Shown here in pieces: positions 1 to 59,409 of a DNA stretch of 64,000 nucleotides. The position numbers and the translations under genes were made by a program. The DNA is from Schmidtea polychroa (lineage: Eukaryota). Position 1 is the first letter of the stretch, and each line of letters opens with the position of its first letter. Below the pieces are notes generated by a model. The model did no database searches. It saw only the letters and a list, made by a program, of their open reading frames with translations, and was not told the DNA's origin. The DNA lies in NCBI GenBank assembly GCA_044892525.1, contig CM097887.1:112694397-112758396 (forward strand). Direction: 5' to 3'.

Positions 1-519
1 AAGTCAAATTTAATTTACGAAATGTAAACTGTACTGAATTTACCGATATGTTAGAAAAAGATGAAACAATCTTGAAAAAAATGCATTCCGTTGAAAAATA
101 CAAAAAATAAAAGAACAAAGGAACTAGAGGCACACGTACCCCACTGTGACGCATTATGGGAATTGAACATCATCCCCAGTCACCATTTACTCGATCGGTA
201 GCACAACCTCTCTCTGTATAGCCAATACCAATCCCTGAAAATACTACCATGCCAAACGCAGCCTATCCTCCAAACCCGAGTCAAAATCATTACAAAGGAC
301 CCGCTGAATGCGCAGTCAACGAGCCAAAGCTCGATGGCTAGCCGAACTAGTCCCCTGGCTCCTGCTCCAGCTCAGATGACTGTCTCTCAGTCGAGTGCGC
401 AGCAACTCCCAGTGCTATATAGACTTCGTAATGCGAACCTGGATGACTCCAACTTTTATATGGACGATTTTTATGACAATAAACGGTGTTCATTACCCCT
501 GATAACTTTAATCAAATAA
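1..519 (+). pseudogene. Degenerate ORF remnant upstream of RNA motif copy A; possibly a distant member of the repeated ORF family
   Basis: Broken frames ending in an acidic/aromatic tail (NLDDSNFYMDDFY), then AATAAA, then the motif ~130 nt later: the same layout as the other units. No clear N-terminal homology visible. Confidence 0.3.
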
Positions 520-651: not shown

Positions 652-791
652 GACGTAAGCCCCTTCTATCGACAGTCCTGTTTGTTGAGGAAGGTGCGAC
701 GCGAACAGTCGGATTAAGCCAGCTCACCTCTACTCGCGCTTTCCACAGCTGTATACAGTACCGACGCGTTTCACACCAACGGGTATAACAG
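652..791 (+). ncRNA. Conserved structured RNA motif, copy A
   Basis: GACGTAAGCCCCTTCTATCG...AGCTCACC...CTGTATAC-AGTACCGA-CG..CG-G-GTATAACAG matches the blocks at 45863, 47492, 58266, 59149 and (minus) 27363. Confidence 0.55.
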
Positions 792-1199
792 ATTGATAAT
801 TTTCAAACATAACCAATACAAGGATTACTTATACGAACATCCAGAAGTTAATGATTATTAATTCTAACGTTTCAAATTAAATGATTACTATCTCAAGGAT
901 TTCAAATCCAACAACTGCTAATTCAAGTATTAACAAAACAAGACAATATTCGAATCATTGCCGATGTGGGGCAAAATATTACACTCGATTATTTAGAGGG
1001 ATGCACTTACATTATTCCACTCCCATAAAAACTATAATATGATACAAGAAAATTATTTAAAAAATTTTAAATCTTACCGCTATGAATAGTCATCGATTGT
1101 ATTATATTGTAAACAAATCAAAAATAGGTTTGTTAGAATTTCGAGAAATTAAAGGGGTTAATTCGACTTTCGAAAGACATTAAGTCTGGAATAGATTTA

Positions 1200-27073: not shown

Positions 27074-27083
27074 AGAAGGGGAG
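27072..27083 (+). promoter_or_regulatory. Polypurine tract
   Basis: AAAGAAGGGGAG immediately before the 3' LTR. Confidence 0.9.
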
Positions 27084-27195: not shown

Positions 27196-27362
27196 AAGAT
27201 AACTAAAACAAATGTTTTATAAAATATATTGCAGAGAGGGCTTGTACTGAAAAATTGCACCGGGGACCCGGCCTGGCTCTTGACGACCCTGGTTACAGGT
27301 AAGCCACATTTTATCCTTTGGTGCTGTTTCCAGATTAACCCAGAATACAGAATGTTGTACCG

Positions 27363-27499
27363 CTCGATACCCTTTGAGTAATCAGCGTTGGAACTATATC
27401 GAGTCGATGAGTACCAGCGAAAAGTGAGTATTCCTTTGTATACTATAATCGACAAGTACTCAAGTGGTTTTGTGGACTACAGATAGAAGGCATGAGTAC
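27363..27499 (-). ncRNA. Conserved structured RNA motif, divergent copy E
   Basis: Reverse complement reads CCTTCTATC...ACTCAC...CTCGATAT-AGTTCCAA-CG..-G-GTATCGAG. Confidence 0.5.
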
Positions 27500-27617: not shown

Positions 27618-27995
27618 TTAGTCAGAAGAGATCTGCGACACACCTTGAGACAAGCAGGGACGCTTCTTTTTCTGGGTGGCTGATCGCAGTTTGGCGATAT
27701 CCATCATCTCTGTCACCACTGGTGAAATTTGCTTGGTCAGCTCTTGGTCAGTGGAATGTTGGTGTACCTGGTTCTCCAGCCGTTGCACGTTTAGCCGAAG
27801 AGCCTTCATCTCGATTTAATCATGCGCACTCTGGAGTTGAAGTTGTATGATCTGTTTCAGCTTCTTCTGCCTCTCTGTGGGACTAAGCAACGTGCTCTCA
27901 ATCTCTCTGCACCGTCCTCTGAACTTGATAATCCAGCGCCGTAGCTGCCCCACTTGTTTAAGCGAAGCCTCTTTATTGGACCTACAGTTTTCCAT
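27618..27995 (-). pseudogene. Short divergent member of the repeated coiled-coil ORF family, one internal stop
   Basis: MENC...IIKFRGRCREIESTLLSPTERQKKL aligns with IGRYKKKIDELEGTWFTPAQMKETQKKL; CTTTCAG acceptor 12 nt upstream; KKKRP near the end. Confidence 0.55.
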
Positions 27996-28634
27996 TAATT
28001 AGATCACTGAAAGATAAAAGAAAACTTTAATTTGTAAAGGTGTACATCTGTCACTGAATTAATTCTAAAATAAGATACGTCATATTCACGATAACTCATG
28101 TATTCCTTTCGTCTGTTTACTGGGTTATGTGTTCATGTTGTGTTTTAGTGAATTTTATACGCAAAACTTCTTGCTTTTGTTAAATTTTTCTTTTAATTTG
28201 TCATTATTACTTTTGTTTAGTTGGTGCTTTACTCTTCTTTATTTTAACTTTACTTAGTGCTAGGTAAGCATGTTGTGTACCAATACATTTCGTCACGGTA
28301 TCTTTACTTGAGCCTTAACTCAGTGTTTGCCAAACAGACCATGCCTAAACACAAATTTTATATTTAAAATGTGTCTGGTAGATACTCCAAGTCCTGGGGT
28401 GTTTAATTATTTACTTACAATTTAGCTACTGGTTTTAAAATTATTGAGATGAATCTATCGAACCTACTTTTTCTAGAGAAAATATATATTAAAAAATACC
28501 CTATTACAAACATGTTTTATACTTATGAAGGATTGACAAATATAAAACATTGATAAAAATTGATAAAATTTTGATAAAAATTGTAACTAATTTATTTTCA
28601 AAAATTACCTAACACTGAAAGTTGTATATTAGAC

Positions 28635-35975: not shown

Positions 35976-35989
35976 TTCAACATTTTAAA

Positions 35990-37214: not shown

Positions 37215-37374
37215 AAAGGAATATGACTGTATATAATTGTAAAAAGTAAGTATCTTTTATGTATATAACAGTACTATATCTTTATATAAGCGCGGTATCA
37301 ATATTATAAAATAACGGGGATCATAAAATGAAATTAACTTTAGATAAGAGTTGAAAAGTGTATATAAATTAAGA

Positions 37375-37734
37375 ATGGAGCAAGGAAATAACGAAATGAA
37401 CCACAACACAGTAACTGAAGAATTATGGAAGCAACAATGTGCCGTATTAGCACAATTAGTGTCTAATTTGCAAGAACGAGGACTGACGATGCAAAGGAAC
37501 CTAATCGAGAGTATGAACAGAGGATTTAGTTATTTAAAAATAATTGAAGACCAGAGGTTAAAAATCGAACAAATGCAAAGAGAGATAGAGAGGATAACCC
37601 AATATAGCCGAAGACAGGAAATCGAACTAGAAAGAATGATGGAGGAAGCAGAACAGACAGAAATGGAAGACTGGTCAGAATGGTTAACGAACAGGGGAGA
37701 GGGCGGACACGAAGCCGACTCTTCCGAACCATAA
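37375..37734 (+). CDS. Hypothetical coiled-coil protein, acidic tail
   Basis: 119 aa ORF from ATG 37375, heptad-rich, bounded by AT spacers. Confidence 0.6.
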   Translation: MEQGNNEMNHNTVTEELWKQQCAVLAQLVSNLQERGLTMQRNLIESMNRGFSYLKIIEDQRLKIEQMQREIERITQYSRRQEIELERMMEEAEQTEMEDWSEWLTNRGEGGHEADSSEP

Positions 37735-37819
37735 ACCAAACCTAAATTAAAATGTAAATAATTGTAAATAAAATATCGAACCTGTATCGATAAGAACTAT
37801 ATGTATATATAATTATAGA

Positions 37820-39208
37820 ATGGATAAACGACAAAGAGAAGAGTTCAGAGAGATCGTCGAACAAGTCAGAAAATCTACATCGATCAGAATACACAAACAT
37901 GTTATGTGCGGAATATGTGAAAAGTTGCTAAAGGAACCCCACCAAACCCTATGTGGATGCAGATTATGTAAGGAATGTATCAGTGAAGCAATAAAGAATA
38001 GACCACAGTGGTGCCCGGTGTGTAAAGAGACACTAATATCGAGTCTAGAAGACACTAACGAGGATAAAGCCGCAGTGAAAGACATGTTAAACACCAATCT
38101 GGGATGTAAAAATACCCCATGCGAGTGGAAAGGAGTAATATGGAAAGTAATGCAACATATGGGAGAATGTAGGTACAGAGTCGGCCATTGTGAAAGGTGC
38201 CATAAAACCAGTCGAGCAAGCGAAGAAAAAGAGCATCAAAGCCAGTGTGAAGAGAGACTAGAATGATGTGAACATTGTGGAGAAATAGATACGTGGAAAA
38301 ATCTCATCATCAAACATCACAATGTCCAAGAGGAAAAGGTATGTGCAGAGTTCAGTGGGGAATGCCTGAACGGATGCGAGGAAGGGAGAATAATAAAAAT
38401 AGCCCAACACCTAAAGGAATGTGAAATGAAAAGAATGACATGTGTACTAGGTAAATGGGGCTGTCAGAAACTACTACACCGAGGAGAGTTACCACATCAT
38501 TTAGTAGAAAATGCTTCAACCCACGCAGAAATGTGGTCGACTGCGTTACAAGAAAGTGAAGAGAAAGTAAAACAAATGGAGATAGAGATAACATCGTTGA
38601 AAGTGTTAGTCAAAGAACTACTAGAAGAAAGAGAAGCGTTCGAAGAAGCTCGGGCAAACATAAAGATGCAAATAAATCGTATAGAAATCAGCAATAATCA
38701 GGCCAAGGTGCTACATCAAAAGATAACTGAGATAAATCTAAATGAAGTAATACCAACCGCACCCTACGTATGGAAAATAACGGGAGTAAAAGAAAGAATA
38801 CGAAAAGCAAAAACCGGAGAAGAAACAAAAATAACGAGTCCCGCATTCCAGTCTTGGAAAAATGGGTACAAAATGAAAATGAAGATATATCCCAACGGGG
38901 ACGGCACCGGATTAGATACACACTTTTCGGTTTTCTTTCTGTTATGCGAAGGGGAATACGACGAAATAATAGAATGGCCGTTCCAGGCGAAGATCGACAT
39001 CGCACTAATGAACGACCGAAACATCCACGAACAAAGCTTCAAGACGACGGGAAACCAAATGTGTTACCAGAGACCTACGGAAGAAGAAGGATCAGCAACG
39101 GGAGCGCCTACGTTCATTCTACAACAAAAAGTAGAGGATATGGCGAGAAATGACACAGTATATATCAAGATGACCGTGAGGAAAGAGGGGAAGGGTAGAA
39201 CAGAGTAA
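37820..39208 (+). pseudogene. Intronless TRAF-family protein (RING, TRAF zinc fingers, coiled coil, MATH), one in-frame TGA at 38264-66
   Basis: CGICEKLLKEP.Q..CGCRLCKEC....CPVC; CKNTPCEWKG; WKITG..SPAF..GYKMKMKIYPNGDG.G..THFSVF..LCEGEYD.IIEWPF. The two ORF-track pieces share a frame with 53 open codons between them. Confidence 0.92.
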
Positions 39209-39402
39209 CCAATCGAATAATGTGGTATATAATAATCTGTATATATCGATGTATATAACCAATAAAATATTATATAATAATAGTATGAAAAACCCTAAAT
39301 ACGAAAAACCCAAAAATGATGCGAAAAATTTCCGAAGAAACAGTAACTAATGAATAAATTTTTACCATAATAAAAAGATTAATCGATATCTATGATTTAG
39401 AA

Positions 39403-39744
39403 ATGACACAAGAGAAAATAACCGAAACTACGATAGCCCCAACCAATACCAACAAGACACAAATTCGCCGAGAATATAGCGAAAAATGGAACAAAGTAAT
39501 GTTCCAACTAACTAACCTCACCCGAAATTACATCGAAGAAGCTAGAGAAGATGAGAACAGTAAATATCAATGGCTAATACACAATTTAAGAGAGGAGGCT
39601 GAATCGTGCAAAAGAGCGTCGAAATGGGCGTCATTAGAAAATACCCGCCAAGAAGCGCACAGCCACTACTTGAAACAGCTGGTGCAGGAAGCGAGAAAGA
39701 GGCTCACTGACGAAAACGCAAAACGCGAAGCGGAAAACAAATAG
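39403..39744 (+). CDS. Hypothetical helical protein
   Basis: 113 aa ORF; TTTAG|AAATG context. Confidence 0.55.
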   Translation: MTQEKITETTIAPTNTNKTQIRREYSEKWNKVMFQLTNLTRNYIEEAREDENSKYQWLIHNLREEAESCKRASKWASLENTRQEAHSHYLKQLVQEARKRLTDENAKREAENK

Positions 39745-39755
39745 AAGGAAGAAAA

Positions 39756-40414
39756 ATGATGCATTTATTGGCAGAGGCCAGAAAATGGAAAAGACAAAAT
39801 AGTGAAATGAAAAAGGAGATGAAAGAATTGCCCATGAGACTCGGATATGAAAGTGAACAGGGCAAATGGGAACAAAATTTAATAATAAAGGAAGAATTGA
39901 AACGGTTGAGAAAGGTCGCCGCCCGAAGCCAAACATGCAGACAAAGGCTATGGAGTTTGAGCGACATTTGGCAATGAAATGCGACATAAGAGAACACGAG
40001 AATGCAGCAATGGAAGAAATGATACTTCAGCAATCAGGACGAGTCGTGGAACTGGTAAATAAGGTCGCAGCACTGGAACGAGATGTCAATGGATACCAGG
40101 GAGCACTGGAACAAAGAAATATGGTATTAGCAGGAAAAAATAAGAAGTTGGAAAACGAATGGAAAATGTATACCGAAAATCTCAAAAATCTGGAGACAGA
40201 GATCGAGAAATGGAAGGGCGAGGAAAAGATAAAAGAGTTAGATAGACAATTAGAAGCCAAAGATGAAGAGACGAGATACCTCACCTATTTGCTCGACGAG
40301 GAATTGAATATCACTAGAGCATTACGAGATGAAGTTCATGAGTTGAGAGCTCAAATTCCCCAATATTACATACCATATGACATCCAGCGGTCGATAGCGA
40401 TGAAGGCTACGTAG
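39756..40414 (+). pseudogene. Coiled-coil protein, probably one frameshifted ORF
   Basis: Overlapping ORFs 39756-39977 and 39866-40414, E/K/L heptad-rich. Confidence 0.55.
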
Positions 40415-40603
40415 GCCAGGAGGAAACCTTCGTATAAAAGGGATCAAAAAGATAAAAAACTAAAAATCGGGACGTATATCCCAAACAAAAAAATTAAAGT
40501 ATTGTAAAAGTATTCAAGGGATTGTAACCCAAACTATTAAATTTTATATAAATGTATACGTATAAGTCGCACTATAGCGCACCATTAACTGTACATATTA
40601 TAG

Positions 40604-41311
40604 ATATGAAAATCAAGGAAATGATAGAAATCATGAGTGATGTGGAAGAAGGAGAGATTGTAACGGAAACAACAGAAACACAAACGCTAGAAGCAGAATT
40701 GCGGGCAGAGAAGTGTGAAAACGAGAGACTGGTAAACAAGTACATAGAGGACCGGAAAATAATAAAGATATTAAAGAAAGAATGCAGAGTGCTAGGGGAA
40801 GTAAAAAGAGAAGCAGAAGAGGAAAATGAATGGCTTCACGAACAAAGGAATGCGAGGGGAAAACTGGGAACAGATAGCGGAAGAACTATGGAAAGAAAGG
40901 GCAAGCCTTAAAGCAGAAGAAGTGATTGAGGACTACTGGAAAACTGAGGCGAAGGAGCGCCAAACAGCTATAAATAAATTAAAACGACAACTGGAAGAAA
41001 ACCAACGGGAAAGTAAAGAAATGAGGAAGTGGGTCCGCAAATATAGAGAAATAGAAAGAAAACATCAACAACAAAATTACCTGCAAGAAAACGAACAAGA
41101 CTTCCTACAAATTGAGCTAAAAAGAAACCTTGAAAAGAAAAGGGAAGAAATTAGACGCTTGGAAAAAGAAATTAGACATTTAAAGAGAGAAGCCCGTGAA
41201 AAAGACCGACAATTGGAAATGCTGCCCGAGTTAAGACACAGGGTTATTAAAGCAGAGTCCACCTTGATGAGAATCGCCGAAAATAACCCCAAATCAGAAC
41301 CATTAAATTAA
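40604..41311 (+). pseudogene. Coiled-coil protein, frameshifted
   Basis: Overlapping ORFs 40552-40911 and 40826-41311 with continuous heptads. Confidence 0.55.
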
Positions 41312-41347
41312 GGGTCACTAAGACCAATTGTAAATAAAACATAATAA

Positions 41348-42004
41348 ATGTATAATAGTATCATGCGAGGCGAGATGATGATAACAATGATGGTATTGAT
41401 GATTCTGATGGAGAGCCAACAAATAAATGCCCAACCGAAAACCGTACGAGATTACCGAAATCAAAATCAAGAACCCAAACAAGAATCCTGCCAATGCACA
41501 TACCCTATGACCGTAAAAACCAATATTATCCAAACCATTCAATCAACCCGATCACACATCAACAACATCCGAACAATGTGTAAAAAGAATCCCATTTGTA
41601 AAATGATAAACAAACAAATCCTCGAACAAATCCAACAATTCGACCAGTTGGAACAACAAATGCAACAAGAAAATTTTGGAAATCTTGTAGAAAAGCCAAA
41701 AACACCCCCAGAAACTAGCGAGGCTTATTATCTCATGTGTGTAGTGATCACCGAAACTACTTTATTGTGTCTGGTAACTCTCTTAAAAATTTACGAAATA
41801 AAGAAACAATGTCAAAGTACGAAAACCAACAACACCCAACCAAACCCAGATGAAATAACTAACACCATCGCAAGCCCACCCAGATTATCCAGTAACGGAA
41901 CTCCGCAACCAACATCCAGTCGTCAAAATTACATCAATCTCCAAATTCATCAACCACCCCAACCAGGCCGTCAGAGCAATCCATCTATATCGTCACTGAA
42001 CTAA
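41348..42004 (+). CDS. Predicted single-pass membrane protein (signal peptide, Cys-containing ectodomain, TM, P/S/Q-rich tail)
   Basis: MMITMMVLMILMESQQ; CQC...CKKNPIC; TM AYYLMCVVITETTLLCLVTLL; tail with NYINL. Confidence 0.65.
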   Translation: MYNSIMRGEMMITMMVLMILMESQQINAQPKTVRDYRNQNQEPKQESCQCTYPMTVKTNIIQTIQSTRSHINNIRTMCKKNPICKMINKQILEQIQQFDQLEQQMQQENFGNLVEKPKTPPETSEAYYLMCVVITETTLLCLVTLLKIYEIKKQCQSTKTNNTQPNPDEITNTIASPPRLSSNGTPQPTSSRQNYINLQIHQPPQPGRQSNPSISSLN

Positions 42005-42239
42005 AACATTGTGTGTAAATTAATGTGTATATGAACTATCACCTTAAGTGATACTGGCTTGGTCTTGCTTTGACCTTTATCTTACAATAAAATTTTTATC
42101 ATTGTTGTATAATTTTTCTCGTTTGTGTTATATTTTTTTTATGAATGAATGAGTTAAGTTAATTATGCAATTGCGGGACGCAATTTTGATGGGTCCCCGA
42201 GTGATTTGTTGGGCTGAATCGAAAATTTAATCGTTGAAA

Positions 42240-42870
42240 AATAAGAAAGTAGGAAAGTAGAACATTAAGGAAAATAAAAATAAAATAAATGAAATCAGAG
42301 ATAAAATAGAATAAGATATAAGGAAAATAATAATTAAGACATAAGAATTAAAACAAAAAATAAAATTAAGAAAAGATTAAAATAGAACAACAAGTTGACA
42401 AATAAATAAGGAGGAATTCAAGAAATAATAAGGAAATTAAGGAAATAAATAGAAAAACATATTAAAAATAAAGAAAATAAGGAAAAACAACCTAAAAACA
42501 AGAAAATTATATTAAATTAATAGAAATAAGCGGTACTCAACTCTGATTGGTCCGCACAAATAAGAATTTGCTATATATACAACCACCAAAATCATTAAAT
42601 TTACTGTTAACCCCGAGCATTTTATAGGTAAGAGAGAATGTTTAAATTGTCTACTGTTAACCCCGAGCATTTTATAGACATCCACAACTTACGGAGACAC
42701 ATTCAAGAATCAGAGACACTAACCGAGCAACAGTTCATTCAGAGAATTCATAGCTACTTACAATCAATTCGAAGCTAAGCGATTTGTCACAGCAATCGAT
42801 ATTCCATCAACAAACTCATTCAGAGCGACTCACATTAATTTTTCGATCCAGCCTAATTCGACAGTAAGGG
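42240..42870 (+). promoter_or_regulatory. Promoter module 1: A-rich tract, CTGATTGG (42543), TATA (~42572), short exon, GTAAG donor (42864)
   Basis: Same order as modules at 52210 and 59410. Confidence 0.55.
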
Positions 42871-44848
42871 ATTTTATTTCATTTATTTATTTAAATTCGA
42901 AGTTAACAGTATTATGTATCTTTAATGAATAATTAAAAATTTTGAAAAATAACATTGACTCTCTTTTCATTTGATCCCAATTAATGATTTCGATAAAGTA
43001 AATAATTTAAAGGTCTAAAAGTAGTTATTAGTGATAAATGAGCGATTGCACAATCTTTATGATTACTGTTATGAAATACCTTTTTTATGATTTTTTAAAG
43101 TAACGAGTAACGTGGAGTTGAGGAACCGCAGATCATGGTATGAGGTGCCTTCGGGAGCTCTGCCGGTGGATCTGAGGTTCTTCAATCACGCAGCTAGATT
43201 GGGCCGAAATGTGAAGGTTTCTTCGCGGGTCCAATCGCTGAAGGATTGACTCAAAATTAGACAGAATGAGGAAAAACGATTTAGATTAGTTATATGAATT
43301 TAGAACGAATACCGAAATGTACAGTGATTGAGGTGGACATTACATCTGCAGTGAGTTTATTTCCATCCTGAGGAACCATGCGATCCTGAGTCTAACTTTT
43401 CGCTAGCATCGTCGTAATCAGTCCAATTTGACTCTAACATCGTACTAAATTCCACACTTATGTTCGGTTAATTAAAAATTAGGACGAATTCTATATTCCT
43501 TCATTTTTCAGTTAAAAATAAATAAAGCTCTAATGTATAAATAACATTTATTAAAATTAAAGTAAAGACATAACTCCTGATAATCATTTATTTAACTTAT
43601 ACTTACTAGTAAACTAGAAATACCCGTTCAGCAGTTTCCACACCATCACATCAGGATGTCTATCATCGAAATAATATCCACATAGAGTAGGGAGTTGAAT
43701 TGTAGAACTTTTTCATCAAGTAATATCTAGAATTGAGGAAAATCTCCAAACATAGTAAATAATTCCAAAAAATCCAAACGAGAGAATTGTCATGAAAATT
43801 GAACGGTTGAGAATTTGTCCATATGATGTGCGAGTGCAGATAAATTTTCCATTGAGTAACACTAGCATGACTATGGGTAGCAACACCAGCGTTGGAATTA
43901 CCTGAGAATTACACACGAGGATAGATGATAATCACGCAGCGAGTGCATGGCTAATCATAGTAGTCTGTGTTCCATATGTCGTATTTAGTGTAGATTCTAG
44001 CATTACGACTGATAACGACGGGATATTGATTACTCGTCATAGTAGCTCCATGAATAGCAGATGATGGCTCTCATGGATTTTGTGTTGAAATGCGATCAAC
44101 GAAAGATAACTACATGCAGTAACATTTCACAAACCACTCATCTGGAAAATTTTCGAATGAATTAAATTTAACTGATAATAGAATGACTAAATGGATAATA
44201 ATAGACAATTATAATTTGAATTAAATAATTTAAAGGATAACCGAATGACCAAGTGCGTAATTGTAGACCAGTATGAGTTAACCTAAATAATTTAAACGGT
44301 AAAGGGCATTGTTAAATTAAGTGGGGATAATTGGGACCTGCTAACTAATGATGGAAAACTAAAGCCAAGCGTTAATAATAGAGTCGGAAATTGTAAATTC
44401 GAGTGTTACGAGTGATCTAACGAACAACTAATAGTAATTTTGAATAATAGGTAAATTAATTCGAGTTCGTGAATAATAACATTTTGAATAATCACGGTAA
44501 ATGTTTTAAATGATAATTAAGGGTGTTTTAACAGCTACTCAAATGTACCTTTTAATAATCAGATATGTTTATAGACCAACAATCATGGGGCAATTTAGTA
44601 ATTAATAAACCTTCTCAATTTCTAAGTTAAAGATTTATTTGCATTCGTCAATGCTATCCCTTTACTGAACTATTCGTTAAATAAAAGCGATGTTACAAAA
44701 TCGTCTAGAAGGGAAATCCATCCCCCCACTTATTCCGAATACCCGCTAACTGCTGACAGTGACTAACCAACCTCATTCGACCTGCGATCTTATTCATATA
44801 AAAGATTTAGTAAGTCGTTATAGTTCCTTATTTTACAGTTGATCAATT

Positions 44849-45592
44849 ATGCTGCCAACTACGAAATCCACCTTACGTCCTTGCTTCTCTTGCGAGGACA
44901 AAAACGCGATTATAAAGGATCTTCAGGCCCAGATCGGGCGCTACAAAAAGAAGATAGATGAGCTGGAGGGCACTTGGTTTACCCCCGCTCAGATGAAGGA
45001 GACTCAAAAGAAGCTCCATCGTAGTGAGCATTGTCGGGACGCGCTCATCTCGGAAAGCCGTGCCCAGAGAAGCCTTATTAAAGAACAGTCAGAAGCGCTG
45101 CACAAAGTCTACGTACAGGCAGCTACCACACAAAAAATCGTACAGATTCCCATCAAAGAGGCCGATAACATCTTCCCGCCTCATCATAACCCCTCATCAA
45201 AACCATCTCCACCGTTCAAGAGACCATGTCGAGACTGCGTGGAGACCGAACTGTCACCTATGCGACCGGACGTTGTCATCACAGGTACTAGTAAGACCTC
45301 AACTGCTGGTACCTCTGTATCCGCTGCGCTTCAGCAAGTCGCATCTACAAGCAAACCCAAACAATTATCTCGTGCGGAACGTAAGAAGAGACAGCGTGAG
45401 CGCGCATCCACCAAGCCAAACATCCCATCGATAGAAAACTCAACCAGTGGTAGTAGTTCGCGCGTGTCCATCGACTTGACAGTAGGACCCCCGGCGCGCA
45501 TCATCTCAGCAGCTGGCGTGACGTTGGAGGAAAACGCCTCCGAATTCTTTAATCTGGATGAGTTACTCGCCGACACCGAATGGGGAAAGTAA
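44849..45592 (+). CDS. Repeated ORF family copy B, 247 aa (CxxC, coiled coil, Arg-rich motif, acidic-hydrophobic tail)
   Basis: Intact ORF; TTTTACAG acceptor 10 nt upstream; homologs at 46467, 54817, 57219, 58400, 27995(-). Confidence 0.85.
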   Translation: MLPTTKSTLRPCFSCEDKNAIIKDLQAQIGRYKKKIDELEGTWFTPAQMKETQKKLHRSEHCRDALISESRAQRSLIKEQSEALHKVYVQAATTQKIVQIPIKEADNIFPPHHNPSSKPSPPFKRPCRDCVETELSPMRPDVVITGTSKTSTAGTSVSAALQQVASTSKPKQLSRAERKKRQRERASTKPNIPSIENSTSGSSSRVSIDLTVGPPARIISAAGVTLEENASEFFNLDELLADTEWGK

Positions 45593-45862
45593 GAGAACCA
45601 CAGCGGCATTCCCGAAGCCTGTTGCGAAGTCGAACTACATTTGTTGGGGTGTTTTTCTTTTCCTTCGACAAACATTCGTGATGTGTACAGTTGAATCCTT
45701 GTGTCTAAATGTTGAAATTAATAAATTTTGTTGTTTTATATATTTTCGTTTATGAATAGTCAGACTTTGATTAAATAGGTTAAATAAAGCGTCTTCGAGA
45801 GCTAAGGAATAATCCCCGATATGTTTTCGCGAAATTCTGACAAACGGTGGTGTAATGAGATG

Positions 45863-46134
45863 GACGTAAGCCCTTCTATCGGCAGTCGTGAATGGGAAGT
45901 CGAGGCCTCAGCAAGGAGTAGTTTTAAGGCAGAAGCTCACCTGCCTGCTGGCGTCTCGCCTGCATAGTGCAGTACCAACGTGAAGTAATTCACGGGCACT
46001 ATGTTGGAGGAAAGTTATGTGGGGTTTCACTCCAGGTTGACAAGGCAGTAGCACATTTTATTCGAGATGGACAATCCACCCTTAGACCAGCCAATATCGT
46101 AGAGTAGTCAGCCGAGGTGTAACCCCAACATAAT
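45863..46134 (+). ncRNA. Structured RNA motif copy B (core 45863-46004, second domain 46014-46134)
   Basis: Stems GGCAG/CTGCC, GCATAGTGC/GCACTATGT, CGTGAA-GTAA-TTCACG; GTTATGTGGGG/CCCCAACATAAT. Confidence 0.7.
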
Positions 46135-46466
46135 GGTGGATACGAGCCCAGGGTAGTAATTAAATATCAACCTTAGATGAACTTACTTGCGTAACCACTT
46201 AATCGAATAAATCAAAGGGAGAGCTGCGAATTAAAATCGTTTCACCAACATGGGAAATTTCACCATCTTTTTCGCATTCGTCAAATCGACAATTTACACT
46301 TAAGTTGAATTGTGCTGTAAACATCTTAGTAACAGAGTTGGATGTTAAGATAAGTTCTTTCTTGGTGTTCGTTGAATACCCGCCCGCGAATAGCCAGTTA
46401 GTCGAGTCTATATTTTAAAATTGATTCTTGTATATTCCACATCTCACATTTGCCTTTATAGTTATC

Positions 46467-47216
46467 ATGACACCAACTGCCAAGCCTGCGTTACGTCCTT
46501 GTTTTTCTTGCGCGGACAAAAACGCCATCATCAAGGACTTACAAACCCAGATTGGGAAATACAAAAGGAAGATCGATGAGCTAGAAGGGACATGGTTCAG
46601 TCCCGCTCAGATGAAAGAGACCCAGAAGAAGCTCCATCGTAGTGAGCATTGCCGGGACACTCTAATCTCTGAGAGCCGTGCCCAGAGAAGTCTAATCAAG
46701 GAGCAGTCGGAGGCGCTGCACAAAGTCTATATCCAGGCAGCCGCCACCCGGCAAATTGTCCAAATTCCTATAGGCGAAGCCGATCAGCTCTTCCCAAGGC
46801 ACCACGACACCTCGTCAAAGTCGTCGCCACTATCTAGAAAGCCTTGCAAAGGGTGCGTAGAGACTCAGCTCTCGCCCAAGCCAGCCGACGTGATCTTTAC
46901 CGGCACCAGTAAAACGACTCAATCTATCGTTTCTACCTCCGCCCTGCCTCTCGTCATTAGCAGCTCCTCAAAGCCTAAGCGTCGGCAACTGTCACGTGCT
47001 GAACGCAAAAAGAGACAGCGCGAGCGTGCATCTACAAAGCCGAACGTCTCCTCAACGGAAATTCCAACCAGCATCAACGATTCTCACACGACCATAGACC
47101 TAACCACTGGACCCCCAGCACGGGTTATTTCAGCAACTGGAGTAACCTGGGAGGAGAACGCCTCCGAGTTCTTTGATCTGGATGAGTTACTCGCCGATAC
47201 TGAATGGGAGAAATAG
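46467..47216 (+). CDS. Repeated ORF family copy C, 249 aa
   Basis: Intact from ATG 46467; CTTTATAG acceptor 5 nt upstream; 73/79 identical to copy B in the N-terminal core. Confidence 0.85.
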   Translation: MTPTAKPALRPCFSCADKNAIIKDLQTQIGKYKRKIDELEGTWFSPAQMKETQKKLHRSEHCRDTLISESRAQRSLIKEQSEALHKVYIQAAATRQIVQIPIGEADQLFPRHHDTSSKSSPLSRKPCKGCVETQLSPKPADVIFTGTSKTTQSIVSTSALPLVISSSSKPKRRQLSRAERKKRQRERASTKPNVSSTEIPTSINDSHTTIDLTTGPPARVISATGVTWEENASEFFDLDELLADTEWEK

Positions 47217-47491
47217 GAGGCCACGGTGAGCGTTCATAATGATATCCAAAGACTCCATCTACCTTTGTTGTGATATTTTCCCCTCTTATTAAAAACATGG
47301 AAATGTGCATGGTTAAGTTCTGTGTTGTAATATAGTAACCAATAAACCTTACTGTCTATTTTGTTTTCTTTTCCTTTCAAGATTAGTCTGATTATGATTA
47401 AGGACGTCGAGCTAAAAACTTTAGAGGCCCAGTAAACAAATGCCGATCTGTGCTCAACGAAATTTCGCTAGGCGGTTGGGTACTGAGAACG

Positions 47492-47764
47492 GACGTAAGC
47501 CCTTCTATCGGCAGTCGTAAGTGGAAAGTCGAGGCCTCAGCAAAGAGTAGTTTTAAGGCAGAAGCTCACCTGCTTGCTGGCGTCTCGCCTGCATAGTGCA
47601 GTACCAACGTGGAGCAATTCACGGGCACTATGTTTGAGGTCAAGTTATGTGAGGTCCCACTCTGAGTTGAACGGCGAAAACGGATAATATACGAGGTGGA
47701 CCATCATCCCTTAGCGAAAAGAGGTATCGTGGACAGAATCAATCGAGTGGTACCCCAGCATAAC
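47492..47764 (+). ncRNA. Structured RNA motif copy C (core 47492-47633, second domain 47644-47764)
   Basis: 7 differences from B over ~142 nt of core; GCAA tetraloop in place of GTAA. Confidence 0.7.
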
Positions 47765-48627
47765 AGAAACATTTGGTATTTTATATAAAATAACAAACTT
47801 GAGTAAATTATTTTTTCTTGATTCCCTGATTTTATAAAAGTGAAATCTCGGGAATCGGGATTATAAAAATCCAGAAATTTCCCAAGATTACGCCCCGAAG
47901 AAATCCCGGGAAGGACCCACTAATTAAAAGTCGATATAATTATAGAATAAAGAGAATATTTAATGTAAAATTTTTATTTATTTTCATTTAGCAAATTAAA
48001 TTTACTTTTTATTGAATTTAAACGTCATTAGATTACAATATTTGTTATAAAATGTACTTTAACACACGGGCCATAAAAATGTTTCGCGGGCTGGATGCGG
48101 CAACAGCTAGCTAGCGCTCCGATTTACTGTAACTTACAAATCGTAACTATTTACTGCTCAGCAAACATTAATTATTTCAATTCAATTCCATGTTTATGAA
48201 ATGAATAATTGCCTACAATAATCCTACATATTTATAAATCCTCGCCTGCAATGATGATCATCACATAATAATTTACAAAACGAAACAATTGGTTGCATTT
48301 GAATTTCGTGAAACAAATTTCTTCTAATTTTTATCAGTTGAGATCTGCATCGATTTCAAATTTTAAAATGAATATTGAATTTGGTTATTGAATTTTTGCA
48401 TAATTTTGAATTTTGGTTGCTGATTTTGGAACTTCATTTTTAGAAGTACCAATAATGTCGATCCCGCTTCTATTGGGTATGAAATTATTGTTGATGATGC
48501 CCCGTTTCTGTTGGAGATGATGCTGCAGTTGATGCCCAGAATGTATTTTAGTTGCGGATTCGGAATAAAAATGTGAGTTTGTATTTGTTATGTATTGTAA
48601 AAAGAACTTCATAATAAAATATTTAAA

Positions 48628-48631
<4 letters not shown>

Positions 48632-48696
<65 letters not shown>
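48632..48696. repeat. (AAT)n microsatellite, about 21 units
   Basis: Direct reading. Confidence 0.98.
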
Positions 48697-48697
<1 letters not shown>

Positions 48698-49059
48698 TAT
48701 TATATGGATTTAAATAATAAAAATGAAGATATTTAAATACATTAAATTCTCTTTTCATGCGATTTTGAAATAATGCGGTGAAACAATAATTTCTCATTTT
48801 ATCACAAATGATGACTCATCTAACATTAATAGACACCCCAGCCTGTATTATAGATTGGATTGTTCAGTGCAAACGGATGTAAACTAAGTGCGCAATTGAT
48901 ATGTTCAAAAAAATTTGTTTAAAAACAAATCTATCCACGTATTATTTTTATGGCTATTTATTACTCAGTCAGTAGAAAACAAAACTCTGTAAAAGGTTTC
49001 AATGTTTTTCTAAAGAATTAAGTTTAAGTTTTTCTAAATTTTTTTTATTACTCTTAAGA

Positions 49060-52209: not shown

Positions 52210-52885
52210 CTACCCTTTTTACAAATAAATAAAAATTAAATACCATATTAAATAAAGTTGAGTGGAATAGTTAAGAAAATTAAATAATAAAAGGAGAAAA
52301 CAAGAAATTAAAAACAACAAGAAATCCGTGTAAGGAAACCATGAATACTACAAAAAAAAACTACAAATCAAGTAACCATACAAACAAATAAAAGAAAATA
52401 ATTAAATAGGACAACGAAACAACAACGGAGAATGAAAAATAAATAAAGTTCAGCATAAAAACATAAAATAAACACAAAAGAAAGTTAAAGTAGCAAACCA
52501 CACGCAGAATTATCAACGGAAACCCACTAAAATATGTAAAATATAAAAATTAAATAACCGAATAAAATAGATAATTAAAACAAATAAATAATATAAGGAA
52601 AATGAATAAAAACCTAAAAAATAAAGAAAATAGTGAAATTACACCCCAACTAAGTCCTGATTGGACGAAAATTAATATATAAAGCGGTCATTTAGTTAGT
52701 TCTAAATTTCTAAATTCTTAGGACAGACTCCTACTAAGTAAGAACCAGTAAAATCACAGGGACTTACGATAAAACTCCAAGGACAACATTCTAGATATCA
52801 AATCAATTATTACAGCTTCATTCCGAAGGACTCAACGAATCGATTCAGCCTATTGAACAACAGAATTAAGACAAAAGTAAAACGA
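52210..52885 (+). promoter_or_regulatory. Promoter module 2
   Basis: A-rich tract then TCCTGATTGGACGAAAATTAATATATAA, 28 nt identical to module 3; donor-like GTAAAA at 52877. Confidence 0.6.
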
Positions 52886-54816
52886 TTTTTATTTTTATTT
52901 TATTTCATTCATCCACATATATATTAAATCACGAATGTAGTTGTATTAATTAAAATATTATGATTAACCAAAATATCCAAATTTTCTCTTCATGGAGCCC
53001 AGCGACGATACCGTCTGGACGTCTGTGTATGATTGCTAATGCCGCCCCGAAAATTACGATGCAGGATATCCATGAATTACAACGATTACGAGATTTCAAG
53101 AGGATTTGAAGGTCATCAGCAACACTAGTCGGGAATTATGATAATAATATTGATTTTGGAGAAAGATTTTGTAGCAGACGTATAGATTGAGTTTAATGCT
53201 TCGGTATAAGAAATGACAAATGGGGTGATGATCATCATATGCAGAGGCAAAGGATATGGTCGCTGGTAAGTAGTATTTATGTATAATGATTGGTATTTCA
53301 TATATGTTGATTTTGATTTATTATGATAAACATGCAAATAAGGTGTCGAACCGTCTAGCGTGGTCGTCCGATAATAGTCGGTACTTGTACCGGTGGTTTT
53401 CGGGTGAACCATGAGAGGTGGTAAGACGGAAAGTAGCTCGACAAAAAAATTGTTAAATGCAGAGAGGAGTGGTAGTATCATCTTCGAGGTGTAAGAAAAA
53501 TCCAATGTAATCACAGGCGATAATTCAAAGATAATTCAAATTACAACAATTTTGAAATTGTAGGCTTTCCAGACACAGAATAGTCACTGAGAGGACTTTC
53601 GTAGATCAGTTATTTAATTTCCGAGGATTTGCTAGCCGACACCGTCTCAATAATCACCAGTATCTTTTCACGTTAATTCTTTACCAATCTCATTCTCGGT
53701 TTGATAACAATTATCTCACGTTTAGTACGACATTTTCTGCGAAATCGGATTTACAAACATGCACAGATATGGACTAGGGAGAATTTTTCAATAAATCCAG
53801 TTATCGTTTTAGTAGCTACAATCCATCATTTTCCCATGAAAATTCATCGACGTAAATTCTCGCGATAGATCAATCAGTTGCCTCATCGAAATAAACAAGA
53901 TGTAGGTATCAGCTTCGCCGTCTCGTCCGGTTGTTACGAGGTAATTAAGATTGTTTACAAGTTTTCGTAAACACATTAAGAATCCTTCATGTACATTGCC
54001 AGATCTATTATCTTAAATCACTTTTAAACAATTCGGGTCGACCGCGACAAAATTCAGTTTTAACAATCATCGTAAGATTGACCATTAAACCGATAGTCTT
54101 GATCTACTACCGGATGAACCGGATAAACACAATAGAAGCCATAAATCAATTCGGAAATTTCACCTTCAACTAACGCTATCATTTAGGTAATAAAAATGAC
54201 ATAATCCTTGCAGAATAAATAATATCATTGTGTAAAATAAATAAGCTAATTCTCGTAAAGTACATAATTTAATTCTCGTAAAATAAATGATAAAATTCTA
54301 GTAAAATAAATAAATAAATGCCATTTAGTGCCACTCACGAATTGAGAATTTGACAACCATATAGCTATATTATAATTACTGAGGTATTCAGTTCATTCAG
54401 TCGAAAAGATACTTAGAGATTTAAAGAAATCATATTTCTAGAATACTAGCACCAATCAACCGAGTAAATACAAGCGTTAAGAGACAGTTGTATGCCTTTT
54501 CCGAGTTACACAAATTTCGAGTTTCATAATGATATCGGACGTCACCATACTTTCGTAATACCCCCACAGTTAACCTATGACCTATCTAGATAATTTGCTA
54601 CACATTAAATTATTAATTTGTTTCATTTTTGATCAAGTCCTTCCCACCCTTGAACTTAATCGACTGCATAAATTTCCGAGCTAGGTGTATGATGCGAATA
54701 CTACAAATGATTACACCATATAGTTATCATTCTTGGGAAATCTGACCAACGAGCACGTCCGAATATTGATTAGGTAAACACCTCAACGAAGTAAAAATTG
54801 CATATTATATTTAGCT

Positions 54817-55390
54817 ATGTCGGAGCCAAATTTACCTCCTCGCGGACCAAAACCGTCCTTTCCATGTTCAGACAAAAACATGGATATCAAGAAGCTGCAC
54901 ATAGGGGTTCTCAAAAAACGTATCGACACGCTAGAACACACGTGGTTCTCCCCACCACAAACGAAAGAGGAGAAGATGAAGGTACTCAGATTAGAGCACT
55001 GCCATAACAGTCTCTTAGAAGAAAGTCGTCAACGACTGACTATTAAAGCACAATCCGAAGCCCTCCACAAGATCTACTCCGAATCGGAATTACAGAAACG
55101 AGTTAGAGAATACCCGATCAAGGACGGGGTAAAGGTATTCCCGCTTCACCATCGAGCGGAGGAGAAATCATTGAGCCCGTTCTGAGCAAGGCAGCGGAAA
55201 ACCCTACTCTTTCTACACCTATCACTCATGAGACCATTCCTATCACTCACCCAGTCAATACCGAAAAATCAGTCAACTCAACTCCTGAGAAACGTAAACG
55301 GCCGCCTAGAGCCGATCGAACAGCAAAACGAAGAGAAAAGATGGAGGCATTAGAGGCTTCGTTATTTGCTCCCCAATCCGCTGTTGGGCT
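54817..55390 (+). pseudogene. Repeated ORF family copy, frameshifted at ~55180 and 3'-truncated
   Basis: FPCSDKN.DIKKL..LKKRID.LE.TWFSPPQ.KEE..LEHC..QSEALHKIY; KRKRPPRADR in the next frame; TTTAG acceptor 2 nt before ATG. Confidence 0.8.
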
Positions 55391-57218: not shown

Positions 57219-57983
57219 ATGACCGCACCGACCAAATCAGTCAAAGATCTTCGTCCGTGTTTCTCTTGTTCGGACAAAAATGAAGATATCAAGAAGCTAA
57301 ACATCTATATCGGGGCCTTGAAGAAACGGATTGATCTATACGAGGGCATGTGGTTCTCCCCGCCACAAATGAAGGAGGAGCGTAGTAAAATTTTGAGATT
57401 GGAGCACTGCCGTGACAGTCTCCTGGAAGAAAGTAGGTGCCAGAGGCTAACGATAAAAGCCCAATCAGAGGCCCTACATAAGATTTATACGGACGTCGAG
57501 ATTTCTAAAAGGGTCCGAGAATATCCAATCCAAGACGGGACTAATGTGTTCCCGATACACCATCAGTCAGCTGGAGCCCCATCAACGACTAGCTGCAAGG
57601 GACATGGCTCACAATCGTCACCCATTCTCGCTCCAGCTCTCTCAGGTTCTAGGCCTATGACAAAGGGTCCATCGGACCCCATCTTGGCTCCGATTCTTCA
57701 GCCTCACCATGTGCAACCATCAGTAGAAACCACAACGCCAAATCGGAAACGTAAGAGGCCGACGCGCTCTGAGAAGAATCAAAAGCGCAGGAACGCCATC
57801 GCCGCGCTAGAGACTTCACTATCAGTGGCCCAATCCACCATCAAGGAGATCTTAAATTCCTATTCAATTCCAACTAAGGAAGTATTCCGGGTGGTTCCGG
57901 CCGACGGTATAAAGTTCATTGCAGATCGCCGGTTGCCCGTGGACATAGATGAAATGCTAGCTGAAGGGGAAGTTTTCCCGTGA
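57219..57983 (+). CDS. Repeated ORF family copy D, 254 aa
   Basis: Intact ORF; CTCTAG|ATG acceptor; RPCFSC...WFSPPQMKEE...QSEALHKIY; RKRKRPTRSEK; VDIDEMLAEGE. Confidence 0.85.
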   Translation: MTAPTKSVKDLRPCFSCSDKNEDIKKLNIYIGALKKRIDLYEGMWFSPPQMKEERSKILRLEHCRDSLLEESRCQRLTIKAQSEALHKIYTDVEISKRVREYPIQDGTNVFPIHHQSAGAPSTTSCKGHGSQSSPILAPALSGSRPMTKGPSDPILAPILQPHHVQPSVETTTPNRKRKRPTRSEKNQKRRNAIAALETSLSVAQSTIKEILNSYSIPTKEVFRVVPADGIKFIADRRLPVDIDEMLAEGEVFP

Positions 57984-58265
57984 TCTGGAACAGCACCAAC
58001 TTCCAATCCATTTCCTCTGAAAATGATCCTCAGCATCGTCTGACAATCTGTCTGTATGTTGCCCTCTGCTTTGTAATCTTCTATGTAACAAGTTATTGTA
58101 ATTCGTGTGTTTTGTTGGATTAATATAATTTTTCTTGGCATTTGATGAGTTATTTACGAGATTGTTAAGTGAATTGCACGACTTGATTGATAAATTGAAT
58201 GTAAGTCATCAGATGAGGGTCGTCCCCCTGGACCAGGGTCGTACCGAGTTATGTATGAAAGCATG

Positions 58266-58402
58266 GGTAAGTCCTTCTACGGCACCTTAGAACCCGAACC
58301 GTGAGTGAGTTAATAGTAGTCCTAAGGCAGGGGCTCACCTGTTAGCGAACTCCAACCCATGTGCTCATCACCAACGTGTGAACATCATCACGGGCACACA
58401 TG
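58266..58402 (+). ncRNA. Structured RNA motif copy D
   Basis: GGTAAGTCCTTCTACGGC...TAGT..TAAGGCAG-GGGCTCAC-CTG...CACCAA-CGTG..CACG-G-GCAC. Confidence 0.6.
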
Positions 58403-58660
58403 AGGGATATCAGGAAAATCATCACAGATATGCTGGGAGAGGGGACTGAGCGAACTAGACCAATGGTATGCCCTGTACTGAAAACTTTCTTTCCTCCCCA
58501 CATAGCCAACACCGCTATCACTAAGATCAGTACTAACCCTCAGCCAACGGTACTACCTGACTCATTCAGAATAATTTCACCGGCAATAGTGGCACTGGCG
58601 AGAGATCCTGGACTGCAGGTTGATATTGATGCCCTGCAGACCGAGGGAGAAATGATGTGA
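58400..58660 (+). pseudogene. C-terminal remnant of the repeated ORF family
   Basis: RIISPAIVALARDPGLQVDIDALQTEGE aligns with copy D RVVPADGIKFIADRRLPVDIDEMLAEGE. Confidence 0.55.
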
Positions 58661-59148
58661 GAACCGATATGCAGAAGATTAGAAATGAATTGTTGGAATA
58701 TCTTATCCCTGATGTGCGCGAGATGATTTGAATTTTCCTGGACTATTGTGACTAATGGTGTAGCGAAAAAGTTAAATAAGTGTTGAATATGGCGATATGT
58801 TCATCCTATTTTATGAGTGTGGAATAACAATGAAGTGGTATAGTAGGTTTAGAGGATGCTGAGAAATTGAATGAGGGAAACCTAGAAAATTGATTATCTA
58901 TAGCAGGACACAAACTCATTTTCATCCATCGACCGTTTGATTTGGCGTCTGAATTTTTACTACTGAAAGATTCTAACCAACTTACAATCTGCGTGGCATG
59001 ATAATACTCAATCTTGATTTTTCCGGGAGGATTTATTATGATGATTAATTTCATCAACAAGGGAGGGAAAATGTCTGAATTGTTACTATGAAATAGAGAG
59101 ATATGGATGCCGTCTCCTTGGACCAGAGACGTGATAACGAAAATAAGA

Positions 59149-59354
59149 GGTAAGACCTATCGACACTCTAGAACCCGCACTGTGAATATTGAGGAGAGTA
59201 ATCCTACCATAGGGGCTCATCTGTCCGCAAGTTCCGACCTGCGTATACAGTTCCACCATGAACAACTTTCATGGGTATACGTATGGGAGATGAATCACAA
59301 ATCATGAAGGGTACTTGGGGGAACAACTGAGCATACCAACCACCCTGAGTACCC
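59149..59354 (+). ncRNA. Structured RNA motif copy F (core 59149-59282, short second domain 59309-59354)
   Basis: GGTAAGACC-TATCGAC...GGGGCTCAT...GCGTATAC-AGTTCCAC-CATGAA..TTCATG-G-GTATACGT; GGGTACTT/GAGTACCC. Confidence 0.65.
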
Positions 59355-59409
59355 AACAAAAGTAATTAAATAAAATCTTGTTTTAACATCAAATTGGGGT
59401 AATCAGTCA

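What the first reader, a model, noticed from the sequence alone, without database searches (positions are those of the whole stretch)
45863..46134. Six-copy RNA motif with compensatory base changes and GNRA loops, matching no class I recognise
Seen: copies at 652, 27363(-), 45863, 47492, 58266 and 59149 share blocks GTAAG.CC(TTC)TATCG / GCTCAC in a hairpin loop / AGT(A/T)CC(A/G)A. The outer stem covaries: GCATAGTGC:GCACTATGT (B, C), GCGTATAC:GTATACGT (F), CTCGATAT:GTATCGAG (E), CTG-TATAC:GTATAACAG (A). The inner stem covaries too (CGTGAA:TTCACG, CATGAA:TTCATG), capped by GUAA or GCAA in B and C, with an invariant single G bulge opposite the 8 nt linker. G-U wobbles and GNRA loops mostly favour the ORF-sense strand. 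GUAAG.CC could pair with the GCUCAC loop as a pseudoknot. B and C differ at only 7 of ~142 nt while their flanks barely align. Inference: a functional RNA (self-cleaving ribozyme, export or packaging element, or replication signal).
Basis: partly seen in the sequence, partly recalled or inferred. Interest (0 to 1): 0.88.

Follow-up and report, generated by a model that had tools for sequence, protein, structure and literature searches.

The report
Conserved structured RNA after flatworm ORFs
A folded RNA element of about 150-270 bases occurs six times in this planarian-like window, always just downstream of a copy of an unannotated flatworm-specific gene. It is conserved far better than that gene, so it is most likely a control signal in the gene's messenger RNA, not a known ribozyme or a free-standing RNA gene.

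Summary
Six copies exist: five robust and one (27345-27492, minus strand) decayed. Their stems covary: about 90% of cells pair, against 32-51% when partners are slid, and 13-18 pairs change on both sides. Nothing in Rfam 15 matches, even at E<=10.

New context: every copy lies in the 3' region of a roughly 1.6-kb unit. Each unit holds an intronless ORF of about 250 aa, or its remnant, from an orphan family with 16 distant relatives in a 1.84-billion-protein library. The protein is predicted as a long helical hairpin, a disordered linker, an Arg-rich helix and an acidic C-terminal helix.

In the tandem units B and C, synonymous sites are saturated (pS 0.74) and pN is 0.16. Yet the 148-nt RNA core differs at only 8 positions, and none breaks a helix. 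G.U pairs outnumber A.C pairs 27:11, which favours the ORF-sense strand.

Best reading: a cis-acting, protein-binding 3'UTR platform, possibly bound by the unit's own Arg-rich protein. Retroposition signal, ribozyme and 3'UTR intron remain rivals. Function is untested.

The parts
76..198 (+). Unit A: short remnant of the family ORF. The rest is decayed or lies before the window start.
   Evidence: Profile of the family against six-frame pieces, E 1.1e-4, matching the 'IP..H' region.
652..797 (+). Unit A: RNA core (SL0, domain I, domain II). No recognisable domain III follows.
   Evidence: Hold-out model gives 33 bits, E 1.7e-5.
27621..27998 (-). Unit D: weak, broken ORF remnants upstream of the minus-strand motif.
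   Evidence: Profile hits at E 0.1 and 3.5, in the right order and orientation. Weak.
27345..27492 (-). Unit D: decayed RNA core. It lacks GTAAG.
   Evidence: Hold-out model gives only 12.9 bits.
27235..27341 (-). Unit D: domain III long hairpin. An LTR element is inserted about 45 nt beyond it.
44641..44746 (+). Unit B: two upstream blocks (11-mer and 10-mer) shared exactly and collinearly with unit C. They are promoter-like or 5'UTR-like.
   Evidence: The only exact matches in the window, spaced 1633-1637 nt apart.
44849..45592 (+). Unit B: intact 247-aa ORF of the orphan family.
45863..46010 (+). Unit B: RNA core. SL0 is about 45863-45888 (loop CTTCTATC). Domain I is 45902-45957 (23-bp hairpin with CAC bulge). 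Domain II is 45959-46008: outer stem 45962-45970/45996-46004, linker 45971-45978, inner stem with GTAA loop 45979-45994, and G bulge 45995.
46014..46134 (+). Unit B: domain III long hairpin. A polyadenylation-signal-like hexamer follows at 46206-46211.
46274..46383 (+). Unit C: the same two upstream blocks as in unit B.
46467..47216 (+). Unit C: intact ORF (249 aa from the first ATG), 74% aa identity to B.
47492..47639 (+). Unit C: RNA core. It differs from B at 8 of 148 positions, all structure-neutral.
47643..47765 (+). Unit C: domain III long hairpin.
54817..55385 (+). Unit G: broken ORF (one frameshift, 3' part lost). No RNA motif is left.
57219..57983 (+). Unit E: intact 254-aa ORF, 36% aa identity to B and C.
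58221..58407 (+). Unit E: small upstream hairpin (58221-58250) and RNA core (58264-58407). Domain III is missing because unit F's remnant abuts.
58487..58660 (+). Unit F: remnant of the ORF. The N-terminal part is absent and the middle is shortened.
59111..59290 (+). Unit F: upstream hairpin and RNA core (59146-59290).
59309..59355 (+). Unit F: short domain III hairpin. A polyadenylation-signal-like hexamer follows at about 59369-59374.

Best explanation
The motif is the conserved, multi-hairpin part of the 3' untranslated region of a flatworm-specific, intronless, multi-copy transcription unit of about 1.6 kb.

Unit layout: short promoter/5' region, an ORF of about 250 aa, about 270 nt of free-evolving spacer, the RNA core, domain III, then a polyadenylation-signal-like hexamer. 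The RNA core consists of SL0, a 23-bp domain I with a CAC bulge, and a two-stem domain II with an 8-nt/1-nt asymmetric loop.

Shown: the RNA is read on the ORF strand and is under much stronger purifying selection than the ORF.

Inferred: it works in cis as a protein-binding platform that decides the fate of its own mRNA (nuclear export, stability, translation or RNP assembly). The most economical partner is the unit's own product. That protein is predicted to combine a helical oligomerisation module, an Arg-rich helix and an acidic C-terminal helix. This would resemble the way Arg-rich regulators of complex retroelements act on structured response elements. A host factor is an equally open partner.
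For: Position:
- All six cores follow a family ORF or its remnant on the same strand. The core starts 271-283 nt after the stop codon in the three intact units.
- Polyadenylation-signal-like hexamers follow domain III in B and F.

Selection:
- B versus C ORFs have pS 0.74 (saturated) and pN 0.16.
- The core is 140/148 identical, with one compensatory pair, one wobble change, and the GNRA loop kept.

Structure:
- Cells paired are 89.7%, 78.6% and 91.2% in three tests, versus 32-51% for slid controls. Between 13 and 18 pairs change on both sides.

Strand:
- G.U 27 versus A.C 11.

Conserved unpaired features, typical of protein or tertiary contacts:
- The SL0 loop, the CAC bulge, the 8-nt linker and the single G.

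Protein:
- AlphaFold gives helices 16-39 and 46-98 (pLDDT >90), a disordered linker, a basic helix at 175-187 and a C-terminal helix at 236-243.
- An Arg-rich patch is conserved in the 16 distant relatives.
- B and C share collinear upstream blocks, so each unit is a complete gene-like module.
Against: - No expression, binding or RNA-end data are available, and only one 64-kb window of one genome could be read.
- With five or six sequences, two of them near-identical, the shuffle controls are not probabilities.
- Thermodynamics do not single out the sense strand. The whole region has z -2.0 on the sense strand versus -1.6 on the antisense, and per-copy energies are mixed.
- The near-identity of B and C in the core could partly reflect a short gene-conversion tract.
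- The protein has no recognisable RNA-binding fold, and no homologue of known function was found.
Confidence: 0.45

Rival explanations
1. 3'-terminal recognition module of a non-autonomous retroposon. The unit would be an 'ORF1-only' element whose structured 3' end is recognised by the reverse transcriptase of a partner non-LTR element for target-primed reverse transcription.
For: - The element is multi-copy, with truncated and decayed copies (A, D, F, G).
- The ORF is intronless, with a coiled-coil plus basic architecture and no enzymatic domain.
- The structure lies at the extreme 3' end, with stems conserved by covariation across deeply diverged lineages.
- Distant relatives in other flatworm gene sets are fused to unrelated neighbours (transporter, phosphatase, peptidases, ion channel, hAT transposase). 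This suggests dispersed copies.
Against: - No RT-encoding ORF carries this 3' end in the window.
- No target-site duplication or A-tail was found at the unit ends.
- B and C share upstream blocks and abut head to tail, yet they are diverged to synonymous saturation with both ORFs intact. This looks like an old tandem duplication kept by selection, not like insertions.
- None of the 16 relatives is fused to an RT or endonuclease domain.
Confidence: 0.2
2. A self-cleaving ribozyme of a new class embedded in the 3'UTR, cutting the transcript to regulate it or to process a multimer.
For: - The RNA is compact and multi-helix, with invariant unpaired nucleotides at junctions.
- It is under very strong sequence constraint.
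- Flatworm repeats are known hosts of small ribozymes. This rests on my own knowledge and on PMC2770079, listed, which I did not read.
Against: - No match to any Rfam ribozyme family at E<=10 on either strand in the two regions holding copies B, C, E and F.
- No conserved candidate cleavage context could be defined.
- The 1.63-kb unit does not fold as a rod or circle.
- GNRA loops and the apical loops are not conserved across copies.
Confidence: 0.07
3. A structured intron within the 3'UTR. The core starts with a 5'-splice-site-like GTAAG in five of six copies, and an AG preceded by C/T-rich sequence lies in the 3' strand of domain III. Splicing would remove the element or make the mRNA a decay target.
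For: - GTAAG sits exactly at the 5' edge of conservation in A, B, C, E and F, with a good exon-side context in E and F.
- AG-containing conserved strings lie 200-253 nt downstream in B, C and F.
Against: - D lacks GTAAG.
- In the model-fitted alignment GTAAG lies inside the covarying SL0 hairpin.
- The candidate acceptors are buried in the domain III stem.
- The region is about 50% G+C, in a genome of about 30%.
- No junction evidence is available.
Confidence: 0.07
4. No RNA function. The B/C identity would be a gene-conversion patch and the stems would be inherited palindromes or a DNA-level signal.
For: - Antisense folds are about as stable as sense folds.
- The sequences are few and related, so shuffle controls can overstate significance.
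Against: - Double-sided changes recur in many pairs among five independent lineages.
- All substitutions between B and C are structure-neutral.
- G.U bias is 27:11.
- The motif has kept a constant position behind ORFs that share only 36% aa identity.
Confidence: 0.05

Closest known systems
Response elements of Arg-rich post-transcriptional regulators in complex retroelements (Rev/RRE-type and Rex/RxRE-type pairs)
   Same: A small protein with an oligomerisation module, an Arg-rich helix and a short C-terminal helix is encoded in the same unit as a multi-stem RNA. That RNA has conserved asymmetric internal loops and lies near the 3' end of the transcript.
   Different: No sequence or fold homology was detected. 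There is no retroviral gene context. Binding and export are untested. The likeness is architectural only and recalled from general knowledge.
3'UTR recognition structures of stringent-type non-LTR retrotransposons (for example R2, PMC11194090, seen as a listed abstract only) and ORF1-only derivatives
   Same: Both are structured 3' ends kept by covariation with little primary conservation between lineages. Both involve an ORF with a coiled coil plus a basic region and no enzyme domain. Both are multi-copy with truncated copies.
   Different: No RT partner, flanking duplications or A-tails were found. Upstream promoter-like blocks are conserved. The tandem copies are anciently diverged and both intact.
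Histone mRNA 3' stem-loop system
   Same: The concept is the same: an intronless, tandemly arrayed gene family whose mRNAs carry a family-wide conserved 3'UTR RNA element.
   Different: This element is about ten times larger and multi-domain. Rfam finds no match. The protein is unrelated.
Small self-cleaving ribozymes of flatworm repeats (hammerhead, twister)
   Same: Both are multi-copy, compact, covarying RNAs in a flatworm genome.
   Different: No covariance-model match at E<=10, and no evidence of cleavage.

Membership tests
Known self-cleaving ribozyme classes in Rfam 15 (hammerhead, twister, twister-sister, HDV-like, hairpin, pistol, hatchet, VS, hovlinc) | A match of sequence plus secondary structure to the family covariance model. 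| tested here: not met
   cmscan of the whole window at gathering thresholds found only mir-753. Scans of 45000-48500 and 57000-59600 at E<=10 on both strands gave no ribozyme family.
Deltavirus-like, viroid-like or retrozyme circular RNAs | A unit-length RNA that folds into a highly paired rod and is more stable than shuffled sequence. | tested here: not met
   The circular fold of the 1629-nt B-to-C unit is -445 kcal/mol, against -436 +/- 13 for shuffles. Only 13% of pairs lie on the main antidiagonal.
Non-LTR retrotransposon 3' recognition module / non-autonomous retroposon | The same 3' module at the end of an RT-encoding partner. | not testable with these tools
   None is present in the window. 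No flatworm genome collection was available.
Non-LTR retrotransposon 3' recognition module / non-autonomous retroposon | Insertion hallmarks: flanking target-site duplication, an A-rich or short-repeat tail, and no upstream homology between copies. | tested here: not met
   No convincing flanking repeats were found. B and C share collinear upstream blocks.
Arg-rich regulator plus response element (Rev/RRE-like logic) | An Arg-rich helix and an oligomerisation domain in a protein encoded with the RNA. | tested here: met
   AlphaFold model and alignment. This is architecture only.
Arg-rich regulator plus response element (Rev/RRE-like logic) | Specific binding of the protein to the RNA, with an effect on export or expression. 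| not testable with these tools
   No binding or expression data are available.
tRNA-like or SINE-type Pol III element | A tRNA, 5S or 7SL-like fold. | tested here: not met
   ARAGORN found 0 genes, and Rfam gave no hit.
Spliceosomal intron in the 3'UTR | A donor and an acceptor used in transcripts. | not testable with these tools
   A donor-like GTAAG is present in 5 of 6 copies, but there are no RNA data. GTAAG lies within the covarying SL0 hairpin.

The most novel reading that the evidence does not exclude
A previously undescribed, flatworm-restricted two-component module. An orphan Arg-rich protein and a dedicated 150-270-nt structured RNA in its own 3'UTR would have co-evolved since before the split of the B/C and E lineages (36% aa identity). 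They would work together as a self-recognising RNP, for export, packaging or selfish propagation. Alternatively, the RNA could be a new catalytic class.
Probability: 0.25. Interest if true: 0.8.

Novelty: new variant of a known kind. Interest (0 to 1): 0.58.

Why it matters
- If confirmed, this would add a new, well-defined structured RNA family to a phylum with very few. It has four helical domains and clear covariation.
- It would give a first functional handle on an orphan protein family shared by free-living and probably parasitic flatworms.
- The extreme constraint is unusual for a 3'UTR element. The core is 95% identical where synonymous sites are saturated. This suggests a tight RNA-protein or RNA-tertiary interaction worth solving.
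- It also bears on how intronless, multi-copy genes or elements secure the expression of their mRNAs.

Tried and rejected
1. Known RNA families. Rfam at gathering thresholds and at E<=10, and ARAGORN, found nothing.
2. Deltavirus-like or viroid-like circle of the 1.63-kb tandem unit. It is not rod-like and no more stable than shuffles.
3. Relatives elsewhere.
   - The single-protein word search found none, and exact look-ups found none.
   - The profile scan of JGI metagenomes found none.
   - A DNA pattern scan gave 63 chance hits, all at 16 bits or less with the model.
   - A viral-contig pattern scan found none.
4. Protein identity. Pfam, PDB sequence profiles, and BFVD and PDB fold searches gave nothing significant.
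5. Alternative pairing of the 5' region with the 3' strand of domain II. Self pairs are no better than cross-copy pairs.
6. Likeness of the motif's 5' block to the ORF's N-terminal coding region. It appears only in the F/G pair and is judged chance.
7. A conserved complementary partner for the SL0 loop. Matches are at chance level and not collinear.
8. Terminal inverted repeats or flanking direct repeats around the units. None was convincing.
9. A seventh motif copy for unit G. None was found with filters off.
10. Literature. No paper describing this element or ORF family was found.

Full report
SETTING. The window is AT-rich: about 25-35% G+C, with islands of 38-44%. Its only Rfam gathering-level hit is a mir-753 precursor at 32660-32721. 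From my own knowledge this is a planarian microRNA family. The window also holds fragments with a mononegavirus-type fusion glycoprotein, a retroviral-type protease and a MATH/TRAF domain. These fit the giant 'Burro' gypsy-like elements described for dugesiid planarians (PMC6431247). I therefore treat the window as planarian or flatworm DNA. This is an inference.

THE OBSERVATION.
- I label them A 652-797(+), B 45863-46010(+), C 47492-47639(+), D 27345-27492(-), E 58264-58407(+) and F 59146-59290(+).
- A covariance model built from them finds these six and nothing else on either strand, even with filters off.
- Training sequences match their own model by construction, so I also built a model from B, C, E and F only. 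It recovers A at 33 bits (E 1.7e-5) but D at only 12.9 bits (E 0.32). A is an independent confirmation. D is a decayed copy.

STRUCTURE. RNAalifold and explicit pair counting support four elements.
- (i) SL0. This is a small 5' hairpin whose apical loop is the most conserved block, CTTCTATC. GTAA lies in an internal loop. Its closing pairs covary (GAC:GTC in A, B and C; GAG:CTC in F; GG:CC in E).
- (ii) Domain I. This is an irregular 23-bp hairpin. CAC is a conserved 3-nt bulge opposite a single T. In this domain 78.6% of cells pair, against 39-49% when partners are slid, and 14 of 23 pairs change on both sides.
- (iii) Domain II.
- (iv) Domain III. This is a long hairpin of 45-120 nt, present in B, C, D and F. 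Its base is conserved between B and C.

However, it excludes the longer domain I. The proposed GUAAG/GCUCAC pseudoknot has a constant mismatch and no covariation.

STRAND. Across domains I and II there are 27 G.U cells against 11 A.C cells, which favours the ORF-sense strand. Folding energies alone do not discriminate between the strands.

CONTEXT (new). Every copy sits behind an ORF of one family, on the same strand.
- Intact ORFs of 247, 249 and 254 aa end 271-283 nt before the cores of B, C and E.
- A fourth ORF, G (54817-55385), is broken by one frameshift, has lost its 3' part, and has no motif.
- F is preceded by an ORF remnant lacking the N-terminal part.
- A and D are preceded by weak remnants.
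- E lacks domain III because F's remnant abuts it.
- B and C are head-to-tail units with a period of about 1.63 kb. Besides the ORF and 3'UTR, they share two exact upstream blocks at collinear positions. These are the only such matches in the window.
- Polyadenylation-signal-like hexamers follow domain III in B and F.

THE PROTEIN.
- It has no Pfam, PDB or BFVD relative.
- A profile search of 1.84 billion representatives found 16 proteins. All are unnamed UniParc entries. The conserved helical domain of about 90 aa and an Arg-rich patch are embedded in gene models fused to unrelated partners: a transporter, a phosphatase, peptidases, an ion channel, actin and a hAT transposase.
- This pattern suggests a small intronless ORF dispersed in other flatworm genomes and mis-merged with its neighbours. 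Their species could not be resolved.
- AlphaFold predicts a confident helical hairpin (residues 16-98), a disordered linker, a basic helix (175-187) and a short acidic C-terminal helix.

SELECTION.
- Between B and C, synonymous sites are saturated (pS 0.74) while pN is 0.16. E versus G behaves likewise. The ORFs are therefore old and under purifying selection.
- Against that background the RNA core is 140/148 identical. The 3'UTR just upstream is 42-62% identical, and domain III 48-64%.
- The eight differences are one compensatory pair, one A-U to G.U change, one GNRA-to-GNRA loop change, and five in unpaired positions.
- Either nearly every nucleotide is constrained, or a short conversion tract was followed by structure-neutral change. 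Both imply selection on the fold.

INTERPRETATION.
- Shown: a sense-strand, covarying, multi-domain RNA that is an integral 3'UTR part of a gene-like unit and evolves far more slowly than the ORF.
- Inferred: it is a cis-acting protein-binding platform for the mRNA's export, stability, translation or RNP assembly. The conserved asymmetric loops and the Arg-rich product of the same unit make self-recognition the most economical guess (confidence 0.45 for the whole statement).

RIVALS.
- An RT-recognition module of a non-autonomous retroposon (0.2). Multi-copy decay and dispersed relatives favour it. Counting against it: no RT partner, no insertion hallmarks, conserved upstream blocks, and long in-situ maintenance of B and C.
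- A new ribozyme (0.07).
- A structured 3'UTR intron (0.07).
- No RNA function (0.05).

LIMITS. Only this window could be read for this genome, and no flatworm assemblies or RNA data were reachable. With five or six related sequences, the shuffle controls are indicative, not probabilities.

NOVELTY AND SCORE. The finding is real and unmatched in Rfam. It is attached to an orphan flatworm ORF family. I rate it as a new variant of a known kind, a structured cis-acting 3'UTR element of a multi-copy unit. Interest is 0.58.

Noticed in passing
window 32660-32721 (+): Full-length match to the mir-753 microRNA precursor family (74.3 bits, E 2e-15). It is the only Rfam gathering-level hit in the window.
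   Followed up: partly
window 22654-27195 (+): Compact Ty3/gypsy-type LTR element. Its terminal repeats are 100% identical over 98 nt, and it has an 862-aa RT/RNase H/integrase ORF (24226-26814). It is inserted about 45 nt beyond domain III of motif copy D.
   Followed up: partly
window 5651-17467 (+) and 35904-42004 (+): Fragments resembling the giant 'Burro' gypsy-like elements of planarians: a mononegavirus-type fusion glycoprotein domain (8936-9655), a retroviral-type protease (11294-12418) and a MATH/TRAF ORF (38426-39208). The reading frames are split into many short ORFs.
   Followed up: no
window 6554-7862: Tc1/mariner-type element nested in the first Burro-like fragment. It has perfect 77-nt inverted termini (6554-6630 / 7758-7834) and a 329-aa DDE_3 transposase ORF (6646-7635).
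   Followed up: no
window 8354-8484: Perfect palindrome with 64-nt arms that are 100% complementary, separated by 3 nt.
   Followed up: no
window 35219-36025 (-): ORF with a weak organellar/viral type-B DNA polymerase match (E 2e-6). It may be a Maverick/Polinton-like remnant.
   Followed up: no
window 59421-60130 and 52250-52976; also 55415-55830, 42221-42529, 48594-48740: A-rich repeat family. One pair is 62% identical over 761 nt. It recurs downstream of several units and of the second Burro-like fragment. Its nature is unknown.
   Followed up: no
window 56570-56586 and 55133-55149: Exact 17-nt copy of a piece of the G ORF lying 1.4 kb downstream. The flanks cannot be aligned.
   Followed up: yes
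window 59152-59174 vs 54915-54937: The 5' block of motif F is 20/23 identical to coding sequence near the N-terminus of ORF G. No other motif/ORF pair shows this, so I judge it chance.
   Followed up: yes
window 13887-14059: Run of 173 N. It was left untouched.
   Followed up: no
window 30045-30355 and 34453-34603: A 156-nt tandem duplication (95-98% identical) and a 49-nt repeat in three copies.
   Followed up: no
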